Positions 2,944-51,292 of a stretch of 64,000 nucleotides of DNA are shown here, in pieces. How positions within the stretch are numbered: the first letter of the stretch is position 1; every line of letters starts with the position of its first letter. The notes under the pieces are model-generated. The model made no database searches, was not told the origin of the DNA, and was given only the letters and a program-made list of their open reading frames with translations. The stretch lies in IMG/VR virus record IMGVR_UViG_3300032116_000001, positions 1-64,000 of that record; one strand, 5' to 3'. Position numbers and translations under genes: made by a program.

Positions 2944-3609
2944 ATGAAAAACATTATTGACGTACATGGAAACAAAACCAGAGCCATTTATCATATCACC
3001 ATACGCGGAACTGGTGCATGGGCTCAAATTGATGTTAGATCAACTGGCCCTAAAGCGATCCCAGAATATACGATTGCAGTGGATGAGCCAGATCAATTAG
3101 TTAGTTGTATGACCAATGCGATTAATGCCGCAGAATTTCTAGTGCAGAAGGAAAGAGAAAAGGGTACGCTGTGCGCCAACATTTCGCCCAACAATACTTT
3201 CATTGCAATTGACAACACATACCTTCGGGGCATTGATGTGAATACTATCGTTGAAATTTTGGAAACAGACTTCATTCACGCATGGATTGAAAAAACAAAC
3301 AATAGACTGTCAGCTAACATTAAAGTCAATGTAGAAATGCCCATTTTAGAGTTGCTGGGTTGCACTACAATTGATTATCGCTTTGTGAGCAATAAACACA
3401 CCTCAATCCCTAAGCGCCGAATCAACTTCCCCGAAGGATTTATGTTGCGAGAAAACTCAATCGGAGACTGCAAATACTCTCTTGAAAATCTCACAAGAAC
3501 GAGCATGGACGGTTGCTATATTGCCGATCTGCAAATTCCAGATTGGATGATGCCTCTCGTTGACGCATTCATGGACGAAAACGCAGATTGGGTTAACAAT
3601 CATCCCTAA
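2944..3609 (+). CDS. hypothetical protein, paralog of 3958..4614
   Basis: Promoter motif; shares PxNTFIxID, ILELL and LxENxxGxxKYSL with 3958..4614. Confidence 0.75.
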   Translation: MKNIIDVHGNKTRAIYHITIRGTGAWAQIDVRSTGPKAIPEYTIAVDEPDQLVSCMTNAINAAEFLVQKEREKGTLCANISPNNTFIAIDNTYLRGIDVNTIVEILETDFIHAWIEKTNNRLSANIKVNVEMPILELLGCTTIDYRFVSNKHTSIPKRRINFPEGFMLRENSIGDCKYSLENLTRTSMDGCYIADLQIPDWMMPLVDAFMDENADWVNNHP

Positions 3610-20397: not shown

Positions 20398-20698
20398 CGG
20401 GGCGTGGCGAAATGGCAGACGCAGGGGACTTATAAAATGAGCACTTGTTTGTGAAAGCTGCAAGTGAATGCAATCAAATTCGGTGAAACCTTAACAGTTA
20501 GGCTGATGGCAATACCGAGCCAAGCTAACTCAAAACAGAGTTAGAAGGTGTAGAGACTAGATGGTTGCTGCCTAAGTCGAAAGATATGGCAAAGGTATAG
20601 TCCAGACCACAAAATCCTTTGGGATCGTAGTGAAAGCTATAGTGGTATGAAAATCCCTTAGTAGCAATACTGTGTGGGTTCGAGTCCCACCGCCCCGA
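20398..20698 (+). tRNA. tRNA-Leu (TAA) interrupted by a group I intron
   Basis: Exons 20398-20431 and 20650-20698; joining them restores GGGGA-CTT^AAAA-TCCCT. Confidence 0.92.
20432..20649 (+). mobile_element. group I intron (tRNA-Leu UAA type, IC3-like), 218 nt, no ORF
   Basis: Inserted after the U of the anticodon, ends in G; P AAATTCGGTGAAA, Q AATACCGAGC, R GTAGAGACTAGATGG, S AAGGTATAGTCC. Confidence 0.9.
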
Positions 20699-23378: not shown

Positions 23379-23505
23379 ACTCCAAAAACATTCTCATTGA
23401 GGGAGAATTTAATCCCTCAATGAGAAAAAACAAAAAACTGCTAACAAAAAGCAGGTGATCGTCGTATAATAAGAGAAGAAACTGAAAAGCACAAAGAGCT
23501 ATATT

Positions 23506-23628
23506 ATGAATCATCTCTTATCGACGACAATATGTGGAACAACAGGAACCTCAACAAGAGGAATCCTTTCCCTTGGCGTTATCGGCAAGGATAGTGATTC
23601 TGATTCAGGAGAACCCATCGAATCGTAG
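23506..23628 (+). CDS. Gly/Ser/Thr-rich leader peptide (40 aa)
   Basis: MNHLLSTTICGTTGTSTRGILSLGVIGKDSDSDSGEPIES; run of GGA/ACA/TCA codons; upstream of a terminator and tRNA-Gly/Ser/Thr. Confidence 0.8.
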   Translation: MNHLLSTTICGTTGTSTRGILSLGVIGKDSDSDSGEPIES

Positions 23629-23689
23629 CTTTACTGTGATTACAGAACAAAGAGGCTCGATTCGATAAGATCGAGCCTCTTTTCTTTTT
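23617..23689 (+). promoter_or_regulatory. transcription attenuator (antiterminator overlapping the leader stop, plus terminator)
   Basis: 2:3 ATCGAATCG(T)AGCTTT/GAGGCTCGATTCGAT; 3:4 AAAGAGGCTCGAT/ATCGAGCCTCTTT followed by TCTTTTT. Confidence 0.8.
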
Positions 23690-23818
23690 AGATATGATGT
23701 CTGGGAAGAGAAAGATCGAATATTGAAAATTTCATACAGGTATAGATATAAAAGTGTTAGGGGGTGTTGGATCGATCTTTGATCGCAGGCCTCACCCCCT
23801 TGATCGAGACACATTTTC

Positions 23819-24613: not shown

Positions 24614-24725
24614 TTTTTCGCACATATGTGTCAGGGGTTCGAATCCCCTCTCCTGCTTTGAGTTGAGTGATGATATCCGATCATAAAAAATCCCCCTTTT
24701 TCTCAATAGTGATCGGATATATAAA

Positions 24726-25325
24726 GTATTGCTGTGAGCTAAATCAATTGACACAGCATGATGAAACCAAAATCATCTAAAAACAATAAGGTGCTCCATA
24801 TACGTCTGGGAAAGATAAATTAGACGTGGACACACTGTGATGTGGACTAATCACAGCGCACTGGGGCATGTGTGCAAGCCCGAAAAGCCTATCTTTACTG
24901 ATATAGTTAAAGAGAAAGAGCAGAGAGTTAAGGCTTAAAATAAACTCCATGCGTTCGTAAGGATGAACTCAAAGACGAGTTCAGTTATGACTAGGATACG
25001 AGAGGAGGGAGGCAATGAGTTTCTCTCCTCTCCCCGACAAAGCGATTTCCGACTGCTCATCGGAGAAGTGATCTAGTAAAACACTCAGAAAAACACTAGC
25101 GTAGGAAATGCGTTAATCCCTGATTTTTTATCGGTTTTTAGAGACAAAAAACTGTTCGTATAGGGCTTGCGGTAAGCCTCTTGTTTTAGCTAGGTGATCC
25201 TGTATGTAAAAACCAAGCGGATGGAACAAATCAATTTGTTTTCGCGAGCAAATGATCCATTGACTTTGGGGAACAGCGTAAGAACGTTTCGCCATGAGGC
25301 TTTGAGCAAAGTCTCGTTCCCCAAA
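24726..25325 (+). ncRNA. large structured ncRNA (~600 nt), ROOL/GOLLD-like
   Basis: No + strand ORF of 60 aa or more, own promoter, many helices, located between tRNAs. Confidence 0.65.
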
Positions 25326-25339
25326 AATAAAAAGATTCT

Positions 25340-25416
25340 GGGTATGTAGTTCAGTTGGTTAGAGCACCTGCCTGTCACGCAGGAAGTCGCGAGTTCAAGT
25401 CTCGTCATATCCGCCA
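25340..25416 (+). tRNA. tRNA-Asp (GTC)
   Basis: Canonical cloverleaf, CCA. Confidence 0.97.
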
Positions 25417-25436
25417 AAATTTCCAAAGGAGACAAA

Positions 25437-25652
25437 ATGAATAGACAAATAGAAAGCCTCGATCATCTGGTGTCTCTTGGGCTACTGACATCATATGAGT
25501 TTGTAAACGTGTCAGCCAATAACATTGAGGGCGAGATTTCAGAACATCATAATTCTGATCGATTGAAACTCATATTCCCGAATGGGTTGGAAGTGAAGAT
25601 CACTGCGATCACAACAGGCATGGAAGAAGATGCTCTTTTGAGATTGGAATAA
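25437..25652 (+). CDS. hypothetical protein
   Basis: AAGGAG SD. Confidence 0.65.
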   Translation: MNRQIESLDHLVSLGLLTSYEFVNVSANNIEGEISEHHNSDRLKLIFPNGLEVKITAITTGMEEDALLRLE

Positions 25653-25692
25653 AAATCCCCCATTTTCAGAAGAGTGATCGGATATAAGAAGT

Positions 25693-25950
25693 ATGGAAGC
25701 AAAGATTTATCGCCAGGCTCATCCCCAGGATGAAAATCGTCTTTCTGTTGCCGCTGATATTTTTGCACGGCGGCACCGCCTTGAGATTTCTCACCACAGC
25801 GATTTGAACTACACTGATCTAACTGGGGCAAACAATTTGGCTTTCCTTTGGGAACGCGCAAAGTGCCGAGCATTACTTATGCCCTTGAAGATCAGTGAAA
25901 AGCATCAAATTTGGCTTGAGAACGACAAAATTGTTCTGACTCCTTACTGA
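25693..25950 (+). CDS. hypothetical protein
   Basis: Promoter motif upstream. Confidence 0.7.
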   Translation: MEAKIYRQAHPQDENRLSVAADIFARRHRLEISHHSDLNYTDLTGANNLAFLWERAKCRALLMPLKISEKHQIWLENDKIVLTPY

Positions 25951-26000
25951 CAATGGTCCCGCTTGGGAACACTATCGGCAAGACCAATCGTAGAACAAGT

Positions 26001-26291
26001 ATGAATAGTTCAGACAACATTCTTCAGGAACAAGAAATCGAAAGAATTCTCACGTCATTTATCCAATCGCGAAATCGACAAGAAAGAGAATGCTCATTGG
26101 AGGAATGCCAAGGGATTATTAATTGGGCAGCTGAAGTTATTGTGAATTACACAGCCTTGCAGCTTTTATTAAAAGGTCATGCGGAAATCGAAGATTTTGA
26201 TGGTGATGATGTTCGTCTCACCACTCCCGAAAACATTCAGTTTCATACTCCGCTGATGAATCAAATCGCGAGGCAAATTGAAGAACTTTAA
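26001..26291 (+). CDS. hypothetical protein
   Basis: 96-aa ORF. Confidence 0.6.
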   Translation: MNSSDNILQEQEIERILTSFIQSRNRQERECSLEECQGIINWAAEVIVNYTALQLLLKGHAEIEDFDGDDVRLTTPENIQFHTPLMNQIARQIEEL

Positions 26292-26488
26292 TAATTGATT
26301 TTCCAACGAAGCACCTTGGCAAGAGCTTTTTCTAACAGTTTTGGCTCCATGCCAAGAAGGACACGTGCCCTGAAACCACGTGTTAATGCTGAAAATATGG
26401 GGACAATCGGGAGAGACCGATAAAAAATCCCTCTTTTTTGGGGAATGAAATTCATATAAGAAATGTGAAGTGAAAGAAAAGTAAAAAG

Positions 26489-26634
26489 TTCGCCCGAATT
26501 AAATATCGGAACAATCCTTTCCTGAAGAGGTTTAGCACTAATTAGGATTAAAGACACTTGGAGTGGGAACTCTGTTTGAAAGAAGTAACATATACCCCGC
26601 AATGGTAACAGACCTACCACCGAGGCGAAAAATT
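26489..26634 (+). ncRNA. putative structured ncRNA, copy A (related to 50739..50906)
   Basis: Identical 22-nt and 19-nt end blocks shared with 50739..50906; the ends pair (TTCGCC/GGCGAA). Confidence 0.55.
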
Positions 26635-26801
26635 GCTAGATAAATGGAAATCTAGCTCAACGAGCACAGACACCTTGTAGCTAAAAGCGTCGCATGTGAG
26701 AGCCATTGCGGAAGTGGTGTGACAATCGGGAGAGACCGATAAAAAATCCCCTTTTTTCGAGGGATAAAACAATATAAAAGATATCAGTGCAGTGCGGAGT
26801 G

Positions 26802-26934
26802 ATAGCTACACGAAGCACCTGGAAAAGCTAACCAGAGACACTGTGATGCTACGGTGGTGTATAGAGCACAGCAGAACGAATTGACCTCGGTCATGCAGGG
26901 ACGCAGGAGGCGACTTCGCTCGCCCCGTAGCTAT
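26802..26934 (+). ncRNA. putative structured ncRNA upstream of the tRNA-Ser pair
   Basis: Closing helix ATAGCTAC/GTAGCTAT; internal hairpins; motif shared with 24806-24857. Confidence 0.5.
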
Positions 26935-26942
26935 AATTTTTC

Positions 26943-27030
26943 GGAGAGTAAACCAGTCAAGGATTGGGGCATCCTGGAAAGATGATCGGATGTGCGAACA
27001 TCTACGGGGCAGGTCCGTTGCTCTCCTCCA
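26943..27030 (+). tRNA. tRNA-Ser (GGA), atypical T-loop
   Basis: GGAGAGT/GCTCTCC-TCCA; CATC-CTGGAAA-GATG; long variable arm. Confidence 0.75.
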
Positions 27031-27047
27031 TTTTCATTCAAAAGAAC

Positions 27048-27133
27048 GGAACGTAATCCCGACAGGTGCTGGGCGATGTTTGCTAAACAATCGGCTTTGT
27101 AAAAGAAGTGGGGTTCGAGTCCTCTGCGTTCCT
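27048..27133 (+). tRNA. tRNA-Ser (GCT)
   Basis: GGAACGT/GCGTTCC; anticodon loop TTGCTAA; GGTTCGAGTCC; no encoded CCA. Confidence 0.75.
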
Positions 27134-27178
27134 AAAAAAATCCCCCTTTCTTTTTGTTCCTGGAGTGATATATAAAAC

Positions 27179-27379
27179 ATGAAAGATTTTGAAGACGTGG
27201 TTTTTGGAAGTTCCGATGAATGGAATGGGGCAGCTGGTATTGTGCCTGAGGACAAGTTTTACGTTTCTTATCCCGATTGTTCCATTCAGATTTGCGACAC
27301 CGAAGGAGAGTGTGCGGCAATTCAAAGAGAATTCCGTGTTATGCACCGCCGAAACCCGATCACTGGCGAAGCAACTTAA
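27179..27379 (+). CDS. hypothetical protein
   Basis: Promoter motif upstream. Confidence 0.7.
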   Translation: MKDFEDVVFGSSDEWNGAAGIVPEDKFYVSYPDCSIQICDTEGECAAIQREFRVMHRRNPITGEAT

Positions 27380-31953: not shown

Positions 31954-32163
31954 ATGAACGATTCAAATCGCTTTGAAGTAATCAGCTCAGGTCCATACAA
32001 TTTGAAGATTGTTGCGCAAACTATGACTGAGTGCATGGATATGATTCGACGAAACTCTGACATGGTGGACTTCTGGGCAGTTTTAGACCATTCTACGAAA
32101 ACCGTGGTCGCTTTAAGCCAGGACTGGAAAGTCTTGCCAACATTCAAACCCGCAGTAAACTAA
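31954..32163 (+). CDS. hypothetical protein
   Basis: Promoter motif upstream. Confidence 0.6.
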   Translation: MNDSNRFEVISSGPYNLKIVAQTMTECMDMIRRNSDMVDFWAVLDHSTKTVVALSQDWKVLPTFKPAVN

Positions 32164-33443
32164 TGAAAGAATCTCGATATATTTTCGCTGACGTGAGCGC
32201 GAATAATAACAAGTTTTGGAACATCAAAATTGAACCAAACTTCACGGTCGTAACTTCGTGGGGCCGAGTCGGAGATAACGCACAATCAAAGGAATTTCCC
32301 CACGGAAGCCTTGCAGACGCAGAAAAGTTCTTCGATAGGAAATGCCGCGAAAAGGAACGAAAAGGATACGTTAAGCAAAGAGTTCTGATCGGAGAATACA
32401 CCACGCAAGATAACACTTCGCTTGCGTCAGTTGCCAAACAACAAATCAACACAAATAGCCCCGAATTAGATGAACTAATTGCCTTCCTGACTAAAGCAAA
32501 CGTTCATAACATTCTAACAGCAACAGCTATGGAATACGACACTTCAAAGGGAGTTTTTACAACGCCCCTCGGAGTTGTCACGAACGATGCCATTCAAGAT
32601 GCACGAAGCATCTTGGCATCAATGGGCCTTCTTGTGCATAATCAAGATTGGAACTCCCCCGATTGGAATTCGCTCTTGTCTATGTACCTTACTGCCATCC
32701 CTCAAAAGATTGGACGCAGAAAGCCAGACCCAAGAGAACTCTTCCCGAGCCTTCAAGCTATTCAAAATCAAAGCAAAATTCTTGACGACCTGGAAGCATC
32801 ATTCCAATCTGTCGTGAGCGCACCACTGACGCAGAAAGGGGATGACACAAACACGCCACAAGTGTTTGATGTGAAATTGCATCTTGTAGACGATCAAAGC
32901 ATAATTCGACGAATCAAAAACAAATACGACTCCACACGAAAGACCATGCACGCATCATATCATCTGGGGGTGAAACGAGTCTTTTCTGTCGAAATTAACG
33001 CGATGGCAAAGGCATATGGTGATCGGGGAAAGAACGTCGGCAACGTGATGGAACTCTGGCATGGGACACGAGCGGGGAACCTTTTGAGCATCCTTAAAGG
33101 CGGACTGCAAGTCCCACCCGCATCGAGCCCTCATGTGACGGGGAGAATGTTCGGGGATGGATTGTATTTTTCAGATCAGTCCACGAAAAGCCTCAATTAT
33201 GCCTATGGAGCAGCACCAGGACAAAGAGGAGGAATTGAATCGTCCACGTTCATGTTTCTCGCAGATGTAGCAATGGGACGCCCATTTGTCCCAACGTCCT
33301 ATACACGACCGTCAAAGTACCCCGTGCAAGGACATGATTCAATATTTGCAAAAGCAGGACAATCAGGCGTACACAATAATGAAATGATCGTATACACCAC
33401 CGATCAATGCAACCTCACCTACCTGGTTGAATTCGGAAACTAA
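32163..33443 (+). CDS. WGR-domain poly(ADP-ribose) polymerase (PARP)
   Basis: WGRVG; helical regulatory domain; LWHGT, GRMFGDGLYF, KSLNY, NEMIVY (H-Y-E triad). Confidence 0.92.
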   Translation: MKESRYIFADVSANNNKFWNIKIEPNFTVVTSWGRVGDNAQSKEFPHGSLADAEKFFDRKCREKERKGYVKQRVLIGEYTTQDNTSLASVAKQQINTNSPELDELIAFLTKANVHNILTATAMEYDTSKGVFTTPLGVVTNDAIQDARSILASMGLLVHNQDWNSPDWNSLLSMYLTAIPQKIGRRKPDPRELFPSLQAIQNQSKILDDLEASFQSVVSAPLTQKGDDTNTPQVFDVKLHLVDDQSIIRRIKNKYDSTRKTMHASYHLGVKRVFSVEINAMAKAYGDRGKNVGNVMELWHGTRAGNLLSILKGGLQVPPASSPHVTGRMFGDGLYFSDQSTKSLNYAYGAAPGQRGGIESSTFMFLADVAMGRPFVPTSYTRPSKYPVQGHDSIFAKAGQSGVHNNEMIVYTTDQCNLTYLVEFGN

Positions 33444-39020: not shown

Positions 39021-39917
39021 ATGAGTAGAGTAAAGAGAGTTATTGATAATGGTCTGGTATCGAAAAACTCAGTGCCAAAGCACTTCCCCGATTCGATTCA
39101 ATACGAGACGATCATGGGAAGTGTGGCCTACGGAGTGTCTTCTGATACGTCGGATATGGATATTTATGGATTTTGTATCCCGCCCAAGCACATTGTCTTT
39201 CCTCACTTAGCGGGACATATCCCTGGCTTTGGTCAACAGCCTGAGAAATTCGAGCAATGGTCGGTGCATCATATCAAAGATGAAGAAAAAAATACCGAGT
39301 ACGATTTTTGCATTTACAATATCGTCAAGTATTTTAGTTTGGTTATGGAAAACAATCCCAACATGGTGGATTCTCTTTTCACTCCACAAAACGCGATTTT
39401 GCACTGCTCTCCAATCGCTCAAATGGTGCGTGACGAACGTCATATCTTCTTGCATAAGGGAGCGTGGCACAAGTTCAAGGGCTATGCCTACTCGCAGATG
39501 CACAAAATTCGATCAAAGGAGGCTCCGCAAGGCAAGCGAAAAGAGCTGGTGGAACAGTTTGGATTCGACGTGAAGTTTGCTTATCATGTTGTAAGATTGA
39601 TTGACGAAGTTGAGCAAATTCTTGTTGAGGGCACTCTTGATCTTCAAAGAAATCGAGAACAGCTTAAATCTATTCGGAGAGGTGAATGGACTTTAGAGGA
39701 AATCGAGGAATACTTTACTCGTCGAGAAAAAGAACTTGAGCTGGCTTATGCTAACTCAAAGCTGCCTCACACGCCCGATGAAAAGCGAATCCGCCAGCTT
39801 TTGATGAATTGCCTTGAGCATCATTACGGAAACCTATCAGACGCCGTAGTGGATGTTGACGCGGCCACGAGAACACTTCAGCAAGTTGCGCATCTAATTC
39901 GACAAGGGGGATTCTAA
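39021..39917 (+). CDS. DNA polymerase beta-superfamily nucleotidyltransferase (YcgL-like)
   Basis: GSVAYGVSSDTSDMDIYG; NPNMVDSL; DVKFAYHVVRL. Confidence 0.88.
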   Translation: MSRVKRVIDNGLVSKNSVPKHFPDSIQYETIMGSVAYGVSSDTSDMDIYGFCIPPKHIVFPHLAGHIPGFGQQPEKFEQWSVHHIKDEEKNTEYDFCIYNIVKYFSLVMENNPNMVDSLFTPQNAILHCSPIAQMVRDERHIFLHKGAWHKFKGYAYSQMHKIRSKEAPQGKRKELVEQFGFDVKFAYHVVRLIDEVEQILVEGTLDLQRNREQLKSIRRGEWTLEEIEEYFTRREKELELAYANSKLPHTPDEKRIRQLLMNCLEHHYGNLSDAVVDVDAATRTLQQVAHLIRQGGF

Positions 39918-50599: not shown

Positions 50600-50738
50600 T
50601 AGTCTGCCTCTCTTTATATATCCGATTAGACTACGATAGAAAGGGGATTTTTTATGGCTTTCTGAGATTATGGGCCACGATCATTAAAAATCCCCTTTTC
50701 AAGTAAATTCATATAATATAATAGAAAGAAAGGCAAAA

Positions 50739-50906
50739 TTCGCCCGAATTAAATATCGGATTAATGAAGCGAACACATGAATAAATCATGTGGTGACATT
50801 GAAAATAAAGAGGCCGTAAAGATAAGACTTGGCATCCAAGTCAATGCCGTGAAGCCAAGGGCCAACGACATCTGGTGGAGCCTTACCACCACCGAGGCGA
50901 AAAATT
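50739..50906 (+). ncRNA. putative structured ncRNA, copy B (related to 26489..26634)
   Basis: Shared end blocks with copy A. Confidence 0.55.
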
Positions 50907-50960
50907 ACTTGACAATCGGAAAAATCCCCCTTTTCCACTAACACAATCGGATATATAAGC

Positions 50961-51064
50961 AGGTGTCCAGGGGGCGGTGAAAGTCCGCAAGGCGGCTGCA
51001 GAGTCATGAATCTGCAGTGCGGCTGGTTTCCTCTGCGCTTGCGCAAGACCACCCTGGCGAGCCT
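50961..51064 (+). ncRNA. GC-rich structured RNA / 5' leader
   Basis: CCAGGG/CCCTGG, GCGG/CCGC, CTGCAGA/TCTGCAG and TGCGC/GCGCA helices directly after a promoter. Confidence 0.5.
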
Positions 51065-51079
51065 TCACAAGAGAGAAAT

Positions 51080-51292
51080 ATGCACGAGTTTGGTATAACT
51101 TTCCAAAACATCCATGGCGAAACATATGACAGCCCCGAATATGTTGGTCTTACGCTGCCGTTTCGCCCAAATGTTGGTGATGAAATCCTGATTGTGGGGG
51201 CAGGAGGAAAATCCTACAGAGTCTTGAAAGTTGAATATTGCGCTGGGCCATCGTTTGGTGACTTTCTTCTCACCGTCGAACCCGTGGTGTAA
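51080..51292 (+). CDS. hypothetical protein
   Basis: LPFRPNVGDEI. Confidence 0.6.
   Translation: MHEFGITFQNIHGETYDSPEYVGLTLPFRPNVGDEILIVGAGGKSYRVLKVEYCAGPSFGDFLLTVEPVV

What the first reader, a model, noticed from the sequence alone, without database searches (positions are those of the whole stretch)
26802..26934. Small structured RNA sharing a module with the large ncRNA
Closed by ATAGCTAC/GTAGCTAT. It contains CTGG(A)AAAG(C)TAA-CCAGA...ACACTGTGATG...CACAGC, closely matching CTGG(G)AAAG(A)TAA-ATTAGA...ACACTGTGATG...CACAGC at 24806-24857 of the large RNA. This suggests a reusable tertiary or protein-binding module, or a minimal version of the large RNA. It is transcribed just ahead of two tRNA-Ser genes.
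Basis: seen in the sequence. Interest (0 to 1): 0.6.

Follow-up and report, generated by a model that had tools for sequence, protein, structure and literature searches.

The report
Orphan leader RNA before serine tRNAs
A 133-base non-coding stretch whose ends can pair lies between an early promoter and two unusual serine tRNA genes of a 379-kb freshwater phage; it probably yields a small leader RNA, but its likeness to the nearby large RNA is statistically weak and no related phage has it.

Summary
The sequence facts hold. ATAGCTAC (26802-26809) and GTAGCTAT (26927-26934) are a perfect inverted repeat. The words CTGG.AAAG.TAA and GA.ACACTGTGATG...CACAGC occur in both the small element and the large RNA. 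Two serine tRNA genes follow, of the 8/4 cloverleaf type that ARAGORN missed.

The "shared module" is weak by unbiased tests:
- Local alignment against 1,222-2,440 same-genome windows gives p 0.003-0.07.
- A covariance model built from the small copy scores the large copy at 7.2 bits (E 4.4 in the window).
- The proposed CUGUG/CACAG helix has about 0 probability in the small RNA.

Two post-hoc observations favour a real, smaller shared element. A third CUGUG...CACAGC hairpin lies at the 5' end of the large RNA (p about 0.002). ACUGUGAU also occurs in a third early non-coding unit.

I found no homologue in phage, viral, metagenome or prokaryote collections. Two related phages keep both tRNAs but have tRNA-Ser(CGA) in the small element's place. 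Metatranscriptome contigs cover the large RNA but not the small one.

Best reading: a lineage-specific leader RNA of a tRNA operon, comparable in context to T4 RNAC/RNAD. Its function is unknown.

The parts
26742..26780 (+). Early promoter-like motif: AAAAATCCCCTTTTTT, a spacer, then ATATAAAAG
   Evidence: One of 58 copies in the genome, 50 of them in the window; 0.44 expected by chance. Related phages have the same architecture with a different upstream box.
26783..26801 (+). Predicted transcript start (about 26783) and a 19-nt 5' tail containing CAGTGCAGTG
   Evidence: ATC here aligns with the ATG that follows the same box in the mRNA units. This is inferred, not mapped. The tail can pair with CACUG of the shared word.
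26802..26809 (+). 5' arm of the closing helix, ATAGCTAC
   Evidence: Pair probability is about 1.0 for the element alone, 0.49 with the 5' tail, and 0 in a fold of the whole 356-nt transcript.
26819..26835 (+). Hairpin 1: CUGG/CCAG with loop AAAAGCUAA
   Evidence: Pair probability 0.95-0.98 in every context. Its counterpart in the large RNA is UCUGG/UUAGA with loop GAAAGAUAAA.
26835..26848 (+). Shared word GAGACACTGTGATG (13 of 14 identical to 24829-24842)
26839..26856 (+). Thermodynamically preferred hairpin CACUGUG/UACGGUG
Evidence: Pair probability 0.77-0.95.
26841..26872 (+).
   Evidence: Third copy of the CTGTG...CACAGC pattern. Predicted probability about 0.
26882..26893 (+). Hairpin UGAC/GUCA
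   Evidence: Minimum-free-energy fold.
26906..26926 (+). 3' hairpin of 7 bp with one bulge, directly next to the 3' closing arm
   Evidence: Pair probability about 0.85. It has no T-loop consensus (read from the sequence).
26927..26934 (+). 3' arm of the closing helix, GTAGCTAT
   Evidence: Overlaps CCGTAGC (26925-26931), which can instead pair with GCTACGG at 26848-26854.
26943..27030 (+). tRNA-Ser(GGA), 8/4 cloverleaf with long variable arm; CCA encoded
   Evidence: Homologues in L108 (E 1e-10) and L123 (E 3e-17). All 27 pairs of the 8/4 structure hold in the three phages, 4 of them with compensatory changes. Missed by ARAGORN and by the Rfam tRNA models.
27048..27133 (+). tRNA-Ser(GCU), 8/4 type
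   Evidence: Rfam tRNA-Sec model 35.6 bits, E 1e-4. Homologues in L108 and L123.
24803..24857 (+). Counterpart words in the large RNA: the hairpin with loop GAAAGAUAAA, and the hairpin CUGUGAU/AUCACAG
24731..24757 (+). Extra GCUGUG-15 nt-CACAGC hairpin at the 5' end of the large RNA
   Evidence: it is also in the minimum-free-energy fold.
24728..25288 (+). Large non-coding RNA, the partner in the comparison
   Evidence: Promoter motif at 24686. RNA-library contigs cover 24738-25217, 24738-25278 and <=24650-25288 at depth 33-61, while the neighbouring ORFs have none. Fold z-score -3.49. No Rfam family.

Best explanation
The element is the leader domain of an early RNA-only operon: promoter, then about 158 nt of leader, then tRNA-Ser(GGA), then tRNA-Ser(GCU).

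Transcription probably starts near 26783. Host RNase P cutting at the 5' end of the first tRNA (26943) would free the leader. Its ends can lock in an 8-bp helix that abuts a 7-bp 3' hairpin, so it may persist as a small stable RNA, as RNAC and RNAD of the T4 tRNA cluster do.

It is specific to this phage lineage. With the 5' domain of the abundant 560-nt RNA 2 kb upstream it shares an A-rich-loop hairpin and the word ACACUGUGAUG, which begins a CUGUG...CACAGC hairpin. I take these to be remnants of a duplication of promoter-proximal RNA sequence, possibly kept as a common recognition site for one nuclease or RNA-binding protein that handles these tRNA-linked early transcripts.

Shown: the sequence features, the promoter motif, the two tRNAs and their conservation, and the presence of the large RNA in RNA libraries. 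Inferred: transcription start, processing, stability, any factor binding, and any function.
For: - Non-coding: there is no credible ORF. The frame from the predicted start begins with ATC and is only 33 codons long (read).
- Promoter: the motif lies directly upstream, like 57 others. The same motif in front of the large RNA fits RNA contigs that begin at 24738 in two runs.
- The next promoter motif is at 27136, right after the second tRNA, so leader and tRNAs form one unit.
- The tRNAs are real and conserved.
- The closing helix and hairpin 1 are stable for the element alone.
- One RNA contig coming from upstream ends at 26794, 8 nt before the helix. This is a single contig at depth 3.6, so only a hint.
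- Shared element: the 11-mer is unique to the two RNAs. A third CTGTG...CACAGC hairpin lies in the large RNA, against 2 other copies in 758 kb of strand sequence. ACTGTGAT is at background frequency in the genome (12 copies, 11.6 expected), yet 3 copies fall in three early non-coding units at 23.6-26.9 kb.
- Duplication of early non-coding sequence does happen in this genome: 26402-26439 matches 26721-26757 at 97%, and the RNA at 26464-26740 has a paralogue at 50724-50922.
Against: - No RNA evidence for the small element: none of four metatranscriptome assemblies covers 26800-27143. Contigs rarely hold RNAs this short, and the tRNAs there are uncovered too.
- Folding is barely better than shuffles (z -1.7 to -2.05). 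The closing helix competes with GCUACGG/CCGUAGC and vanishes in a fold of the whole transcript.
- The similarity to the large RNA is marginal (p 0.003-0.07; covariance-model E 4.4).
- The enrichment arguments are post hoc.
- No homologue anywhere, so no covariation.
- In related phages the slot holds tRNA-Ser(CGA) instead, so the element is dispensable for the tRNA pair.
Confidence: 0.35

Rival explanations
1. An inert transcribed spacer. The stretch is only the 5' leader that RNase P removes and the cell degrades. The closing repeat and the likeness to the large RNA are chance.
For: Alignment p 0.003-0.07; covariance-model E 4.4; no BLAST hit. Fold z only -1.7 to -2.05. 8-bp inverted repeats are common by chance. 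Not conserved in L108 or L123. No RNA contig covers it.
Against: A 158-nt leader is long for a tRNA operon. The three CTGTG...CACAGC hairpins and the unique 11-mer cluster in 0.7 kb of a 379-kb genome. The other long leader in this region, the large RNA in front of tRNA-Asp, is clearly an abundant RNA.
Confidence: 0.3
2. A cis-acting control or processing element. Two nearly isoenergetic folds (terminal helix, or GCUACGG/CCGUAGC plus tail/CACUG pairing) would set how the downstream tRNAs are matured, or make the polymerase resist termination, as promoter-proximal two-hairpin RNAs do in lambdoid phages (from my own knowledge).
For: Mutually exclusive helices share the 3' strand. The closing helix has probability 0.49 with the tail present. 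The position is promoter-proximal in both RNAs.
Against: No ligand-binding or known regulatory family matches. No terminator is evident between the leader and the tRNAs. Alternative pairings of this size are common in random sequence. The relatives express the same tRNAs without it.
Confidence: 0.1
3. A trans-acting partner of the large RNA, or of a shared protein. The common hairpins would let the small RNA join the same complex as the 560-nt RNA.
For: Shared words and hairpin 1. A third CUGUG hairpin. The large RNA is abundant.
Against: Same statistical weakness as above. No significant small-large complementarity (z -0.8). No conservation.
Confidence: 0.1
4. A decayed or remodelled tRNA. 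The slot in front of tRNA-Ser(GGA) holds tRNA-Ser(CGA) in two related phages, and the element has a terminal helix plus four hairpins, like a long-arm tRNA.
For: Synteny in L108 (4344-4434) and L123 (5584-5670). Five-helix layout.
Against: No hit to Rfam tRNA or tRNA-Sec at E<=10 in a 166-nt search, and none by ARAGORN. No T-loop or D-loop consensus. nhmmer finds no likeness to the relatives' loci. The phage has its own tRNA-Ser(CGA) at 313113.
Confidence: 0.05

Closest known systems
Phage T4 small stable RNAs RNAC (species 1, 139 nt) and RNAD (species 2, 119 nt)
   Same: Similar size (133 nt core). Encoded inside a phage tRNA gene cluster and transcribed with the tRNAs. No known role (PMC3014915; T4 annotation).
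   Different: In T4 they lie downstream of the last tRNA, not upstream. RNAC carries a canonical T-arm next to its terminal helix; this element does not. No sequence likeness: RNAD against the small element p 0.03-0.17, RNAC p about 1. Accumulation is shown for the T4 RNAs (both annotated 'small, stable RNA'), not here.
5' leaders of bacterial and phage tRNA precursors removed by RNase P
   Same: Position between a promoter and the first tRNA. Expected release by RNase P.
   Different: Much longer than usual (my own knowledge) and able to close on itself. Shares words with another RNA of the phage.
GOLLD and ROOL large RNAs (relevant to the partner RNA)
   Same: Large, structured, often in phages or prophages and next to tRNAs, possibly co-transcribed with them (PMC5737381). 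The 560-nt RNA here sits directly before tRNA-Asp and is abundant in lake RNA libraries.
   Different: No match to either Rfam model even at E<=10. The small element is a quarter of their size.
(8/4) tRNA-Ser of phages (Mukai et al., PMC5389517), for the two downstream genes
   Same: 8-bp acceptor and 4-bp T stem, long variable arm, serine anticodons, found in phage tRNA clusters.
   Different: This concerns the neighbouring genes, not the small element, which is not a tRNA by any test.

Membership tests
Any Rfam 15 family | Covariance-model match at or near the gathering score | tested here: not met
   No match on 26780-26945 at E<=10. None in the 2.8-kb or whole-window scans.
tRNA / tRNA-like (including the 8/4 and tRNA-Sec types) | Cloverleaf with T-loop and D-loop consensus, detected by tRNA models | tested here: not met
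   ARAGORN finds nothing. Rfam tRNA and tRNA-Sec give no hit. The 3' hairpin loop CUUCGC is not a T-loop (read from the sequence).
T4 RNAC/RNAD-like stable RNAs of tRNA clusters | Encoded in a phage tRNA cluster and co-transcribed with tRNAs | tested here: met
   Promoter at 26742, tRNAs at 26943 and 27048, next promoter at 27136. Co-transcription is inferred from this layout.
T4 RNAC/RNAD-like stable RNAs of tRNA clusters | Accumulates as a discrete stable RNA | tested here: inconclusive
   No contig over 26800-27143 in four RNA-library assemblies. Contigs cannot show short RNAs or their ends.
T4 RNAC/RNAD-like stable RNAs of tRNA clusters | Sequence or structure homology to the T4 RNAs | tested here: not met
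   Empirical p 0.03-1. RNAC has a T-arm that this element lacks.
   p 0.0025-0.07. Covariance-model E 4.4 in 64 kb and 0.012 in 172 nt. Post-hoc enrichment of CTGTG...CACAGC, p about 0.002.
   Hairpin 1 is predicted in both. Hairpin 2 is predicted in the large RNA only; in the small RNA a different hairpin wins (p 0.94 against about 0).
   The pattern occurs only in 100%-identical copies of this phage in metagenomes. None in viral contigs. Only chance hits in prokaryote genomes. No covariance-model hit in 250 kb of related phages. The relatives lack both RNAs, so this shows orphan status, not loss of a module.
GOLLD / ROOL (for the partner RNA) | Match to RF models of these families | tested here: not met
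   No hit at E<=10 on 24715-25338.

The most novel reading that the evidence does not exclude
The small RNA and the abundant 560-nt RNA belong to one modular RNA system of this phage. The A-rich-loop hairpin plus the CUGUG...CACAGC hairpin would be a docking unit through which the small RNA, or a common phage protein, joins the large RNA in a complex that acts on the tRNAs made from the same transcripts. That would be a mixed-size relative of the RNA-only assemblies formed by ROOL and GOLLD.
Probability: 0.07. Interest if true: 0.7.

Novelty: new member of a known kind. Interest (0 to 1): 0.3.

Why it matters
On its own this is a candidate orphan small RNA with no function attached, so it matters little. 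Its value lies in context. This widespread freshwater jumbo phage packs its early region with RNA-only units behind one promoter type: a 560-nt RNA that is abundant in lake metatranscriptomes, a conserved RNA of about 270 nt present in two copies, a strongly folded 440-nt stretch, an intron-bearing tRNA, and 8/4 serine tRNAs. If the short shared hairpins prove to be a common recognition site, the small RNA would be the simplest handle for finding the factor that binds the large RNA. It would also be a second example, after T4 RNAC/RNAD, of tRNA-cluster small RNAs whose purpose has stayed unknown for decades.

Tried and rejected
- **Rfam:** whole window at gathering score; the 2.8-kb, 624-nt and 166-nt stretches at E<=10. 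Nothing for either RNA.
- **BLAST against 50,697 phage records:** only the tRNA-Asp matches.
- **Pattern scans for the module:** viral contigs, none. Metagenome contigs, only this phage plus 3 chance hits in coding-like sequence. Prokaryote genomes, 9 scattered chance hits without the hairpin context.
- **Flanking small proteins as anchors:** no relatives. Contigs holding P0001 are 100% identical, so they give no variation.
- **Portal-based relatives (55-75% identity):** their tRNA regions have neither the promoter motif nor any nhmmer hit.
- **PARP-based relatives** gave syntenic loci, but nhmmer and the covariance model find no small-RNA or large-RNA homologue.
- **Scans for more tRNA-Ser(GGA) homologues in viral contigs:** none.
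- **Two-copy module model:** MAFFT misaligned hairpin 1 and cmsearch aligned only hairpin 2, so I did not build a two-copy model.
- **Small-large, small-tRNA duplex energy:** no better than shuffles.
- **Likeness to T4 RNAD** (shared CACAGCAGAA): p 0.03-0.17, taken as chance.
- **Other readings rejected:** LexA-type operator (spacings of 14, 17 and 23 nt instead of 8); a MITE-like insertion (no target duplication); a leaderless ORF from ATC (33 codons, no AUG). All three were read from the sequence.
- **ACACUGUGA in the related phage L108** (1427) is the stem of a terminator-like hairpin with loop UGUGAGCAG, shared with L123 (5300-5330). It has a different context and I did not treat it as homologous.

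Full report
**Setting.** The window is the first 64 kb of a 378,848-bp virus record (40.6% G+C, estimated complete). The same sequence occurs in many freshwater metagenomes at 100% identity. The early region carries 50 of the genome's 58 copies of AAAAATCCCCnTTT followed about 20 nt later by (GATCGG)ATATATAA, where 0.44 copies are expected by chance. In most units an ATG follows the second box within a few bases. Related phages found through the PARP-like protein have the same layout with another upstream box, AAACTTTCCCcCTGATTT...CTATAnnGAnC(A/G)TG. I therefore read the motif as the lineage's early promoter.

**The observation.**
- The inverted repeat ATAGCTAC/GTAGCTAT lies at exactly 26802-26809 and 26927-26934.
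- ACACTGTGATG occurs nowhere else in the genome on either strand. In both places GGnAAAGnTAA, which has only four copies in the genome, lies 12-19 nt upstream.

**Is it more than chance?** Generic tests give a modest answer.
- I scored the small element against every 613-nt window of the same genome, both strands, under nine scoring schemes. Between 0.25% and 7% of windows score at least as high as the large RNA. With 1,000 dinucleotide shuffles, 17 reach the observed score.
- BLAST with short words finds no small-large match at E<=1.
- A covariance model built from the small copy alone (two hairpins, model R1) gives the large copy 7.2 bits. That is E 4.4 in the window, behind twelve other places, and E 0.012 when only 172 nt are searched.
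- An 8-bp inverted repeat at this distance is expected over a hundred times in 64 kb (my arithmetic). Both arms are built round the palindrome TAGCTA.
- The 3' arm has a rival partner: CCGTAGC (26925-26931) with GCTACGG (26848-26854).

**Structure.**
- Alone, the element folds as a terminal helix enclosing several hairpins, at -42.6 kcal/mol (z -2.05; z -1.74 with short flanks).
- The terminal helix has probability about 1 for the element alone, 0.49 when the predicted 5' tail is added, and 0 when the whole leader-tRNA-tRNA transcript is folded. Thermodynamic folding of tRNA precursors is unreliable, so the last figure carries little weight.
- Hairpin 1 (CUGG/CCAG, loop AAAAGCUAA) is robust (0.95-0.98). 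It has a true counterpart in the large RNA (UCUGG/UUAGA, loop GAAAGAUAAA).
In the small RNA it has probability about 0, because CACUGUG pairs with the nearby UACGGUG (0.94).

**Two post-hoc observations support a smaller shared element.**
- CTGTG-N(4-25)-CACAGC occurs three times in the two RNAs: 24732 at the very 5' end of the large RNA, 24835, and 26841. It occurs only twice elsewhere in 758 kb of strand sequence; one of those two (353496) lies in an ORF on the other strand, the other was not examined. Shuffles give 2.2 copies per genome. Given a pattern defined from two copies, a third copy inside the same 0.7 kb has a chance of about 0.002.
- ACTGTGAT is at background frequency in the genome (12 copies, 11.6 expected). 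Three of the copies fall in three early non-coding units at 23633, 24834 and 26840.
- Weakly collinear words (GUGA.GCUA, G..GC.CC, CUGG.AAAG.UAA, AGA, GA.ACACUGUGAUG, CACAGC) run through the first roughly 135 nt of the large RNA and the first roughly 90 nt of the small transcript.
- Duplication of early non-coding sequence is documented in this genome.

**What follows the element.**
- ARAGORN sees no tRNA there. Rfam's tRNA-Sec model matches 27047-27133 (35.6 bits).
- nhmmer finds homologues of both downstream stretches in two related phages, L108 and L123.
- For the first gene, an 8/4 cloverleaf with a long variable arm is kept in all 80 pair cells across the three phages. Four pairs show compensatory changes, including the outer T-stem pair (A-U to G-C), which decides for 8/4 over 9/3.
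- The anticodons are GGA and GCU. Such (8/4) tRNA-Ser genes are known from phage tRNA clusters (PMC5389517).
- The next promoter motif starts at 27136, so the leader and the two tRNAs form one unit.

**Homologues of the small element.** I found none.
- There are no hits in isolated phages, in viral contigs, or in prokaryote genomes, where the 9 hits are chance.
- In JGI metagenomes the pattern occurs only in identical copies of this phage.
- In L108 (PARP 70% identical) the slot before tRNA-Ser(GGA) holds a 3D-domain gene and tRNA-Ser(CGA). In L123 (59%) it holds tRNA-Ser(CGA) and a 116-nt stretch with its own sigma-70-like promoter.
- The phage keeps its own tRNA-Ser(CGA) at 313113.
- Neither Rfam nor ARAGORN sees any tRNA character in the element, so a decayed tRNA is unlikely.
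- The large RNA has no detectable homologue in these relatives either. By contrast, the RNA at 26464-26740 does.

**Expression.**
- Four lake RNA-library assemblies were laid on 24650-27200. Contigs at depth 33-61 cover the large RNA, beginning at 24738 in two runs and ending at 25217-25288. The ORFs at 25437-26291 have none.
- Low-depth contigs cover 26486-26794.
- Nothing covers 26800-27143, including the tRNAs. Contigs do not hold short RNAs well, so this says little. One contig ends at 26794, just before the closing helix.

**Comparison with known systems.**
- The nearest precedent in context is T4 RNAC and RNAD: 139 and 119 nt, in the tRNA cluster, roles unknown.
- They lie after the tRNAs, not before. 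RNAC has a canonical T-arm. There is no significant sequence likeness.
- GOLLD and ROOL share with the large partner RNA the habit of lying next to tRNAs in phages, but their models do not match.

**Verdict.** This is a real, non-coding stretch that is almost certainly transcribed and can close on itself. It is best described as the leader RNA of an 8/4 tRNA-Ser operon, and it is specific to this phage. Its tie to the large RNA rests on one robust hairpin, one unique 11-mer and a recurring short hairpin. That is suggestive of common descent or a common binding site, but not established. No function can be assigned.

Noticed in passing
window 24728-25288 (+): A non-coding RNA of about 560 nt between an early promoter and tRNA-Asp. 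RNA-library contigs cover it at depth 33-61 in three lake metatranscriptomes while the neighbouring ORFs are bare. Fold z-score -3.49. No Rfam family and no homologue in related phages.
   Followed up: partly
window 26464-26740 and 50724-50922 (+); L108 about 3440-3580; L123 2209-2424: A second non-coding RNA family (TTCGCCCGAAT..AAATATCGGA...ACCACCGAGGCGAAAAAT, whose ends can pair). It is present twice in this phage and conserved in two related phages, with low-depth RNA contigs over the first copy.
   Followed up: partly
window 23379-23818 (+): A 440-nt gene-free stretch before tRNA-Gly that folds far better than shuffles (z -8.15). It has a long perfect hairpin, a TATAAT-like box and a classic terminator hairpin. 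It contains CGUAGCUUUACUGUGAUUACAGAAC, which echoes words of the small RNA.
   Followed up: partly
window, 50 sites (e.g. 1932, 27136, 28382); L108, L111, L114, L116: Start codons sit only a few bases after the -10-like box of the repeated early promoter motif (ATG here, often GTG in relatives). This suggests leaderless or nearly leaderless early mRNAs across the phage lineage.
   Followed up: partly
window about 20399-20697 (+): A group I intron (Rfam 58.2 bits, 20421-20624) appears to interrupt the anticodon loop of a tRNA-Leu(UAA) gene. The flanks read as tRNA halves with a T-arm at 20674-20690. ARAGORN does not call it.
   Followed up: partly
G000 294065-294422; 294691-294763 and 294784-294858: The phage encodes a tmRNA (tag AENNFAFAA) and two tRNAs with anticodon CUA, which reads the TAG stop codon. 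I did not check whether TAG is recoded in late genes.
   Followed up: no
window 50965-51080 (+): A G+C-rich leader of about 115 nt (GGUGUCCAGGGGGCGGUGAAAGUCCGCAAGGCGG...) lies between an early promoter and an ORF that starts near 51081. It looks like a structured cis-regulatory leader but has no Rfam match at gathering score.
   Followed up: no
L123 4013-5360 (+); L108 1250-1560: The related phage L123 has a 1.3-kb gene-free stretch behind a sigma-70-like promoter (TTGACA-17-TAGAAT). It shares a 53-nt block (E 1e-10) and a terminator-like hairpin with loop UGUGAGCAG and covarying stems with an RNA of about 300 nt in L108. No Rfam family, and absent from this phage.
   Followed up: partly
L123 3215-4012: tRNA-Ser(UGA) is followed by a minus-strand ORF of about 680 nt and then a second copy of the tRNA 3' end. 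It looks like a homing-endonuclease insertion with a target duplication.
   Followed up: no
window 32163-33443 and 39021-39917 (+): A PARP-like protein (WGR, regulatory and catalytic domains) and an RlaP nucleotidyltransferase of RNA-repair systems are conserved and syntenic in all related phages fetched (68-70% and about 80% identity).
   Followed up: partly
window 24614-24660 (+): Directly after tRNA-Thr(UGU) there is a T-arm-like remnant (GGGGTTCGAATCCCC) without a full tRNA. L108 has a full extra tRNA-like gene in the matching place, 1129-1201.
   Followed up: no
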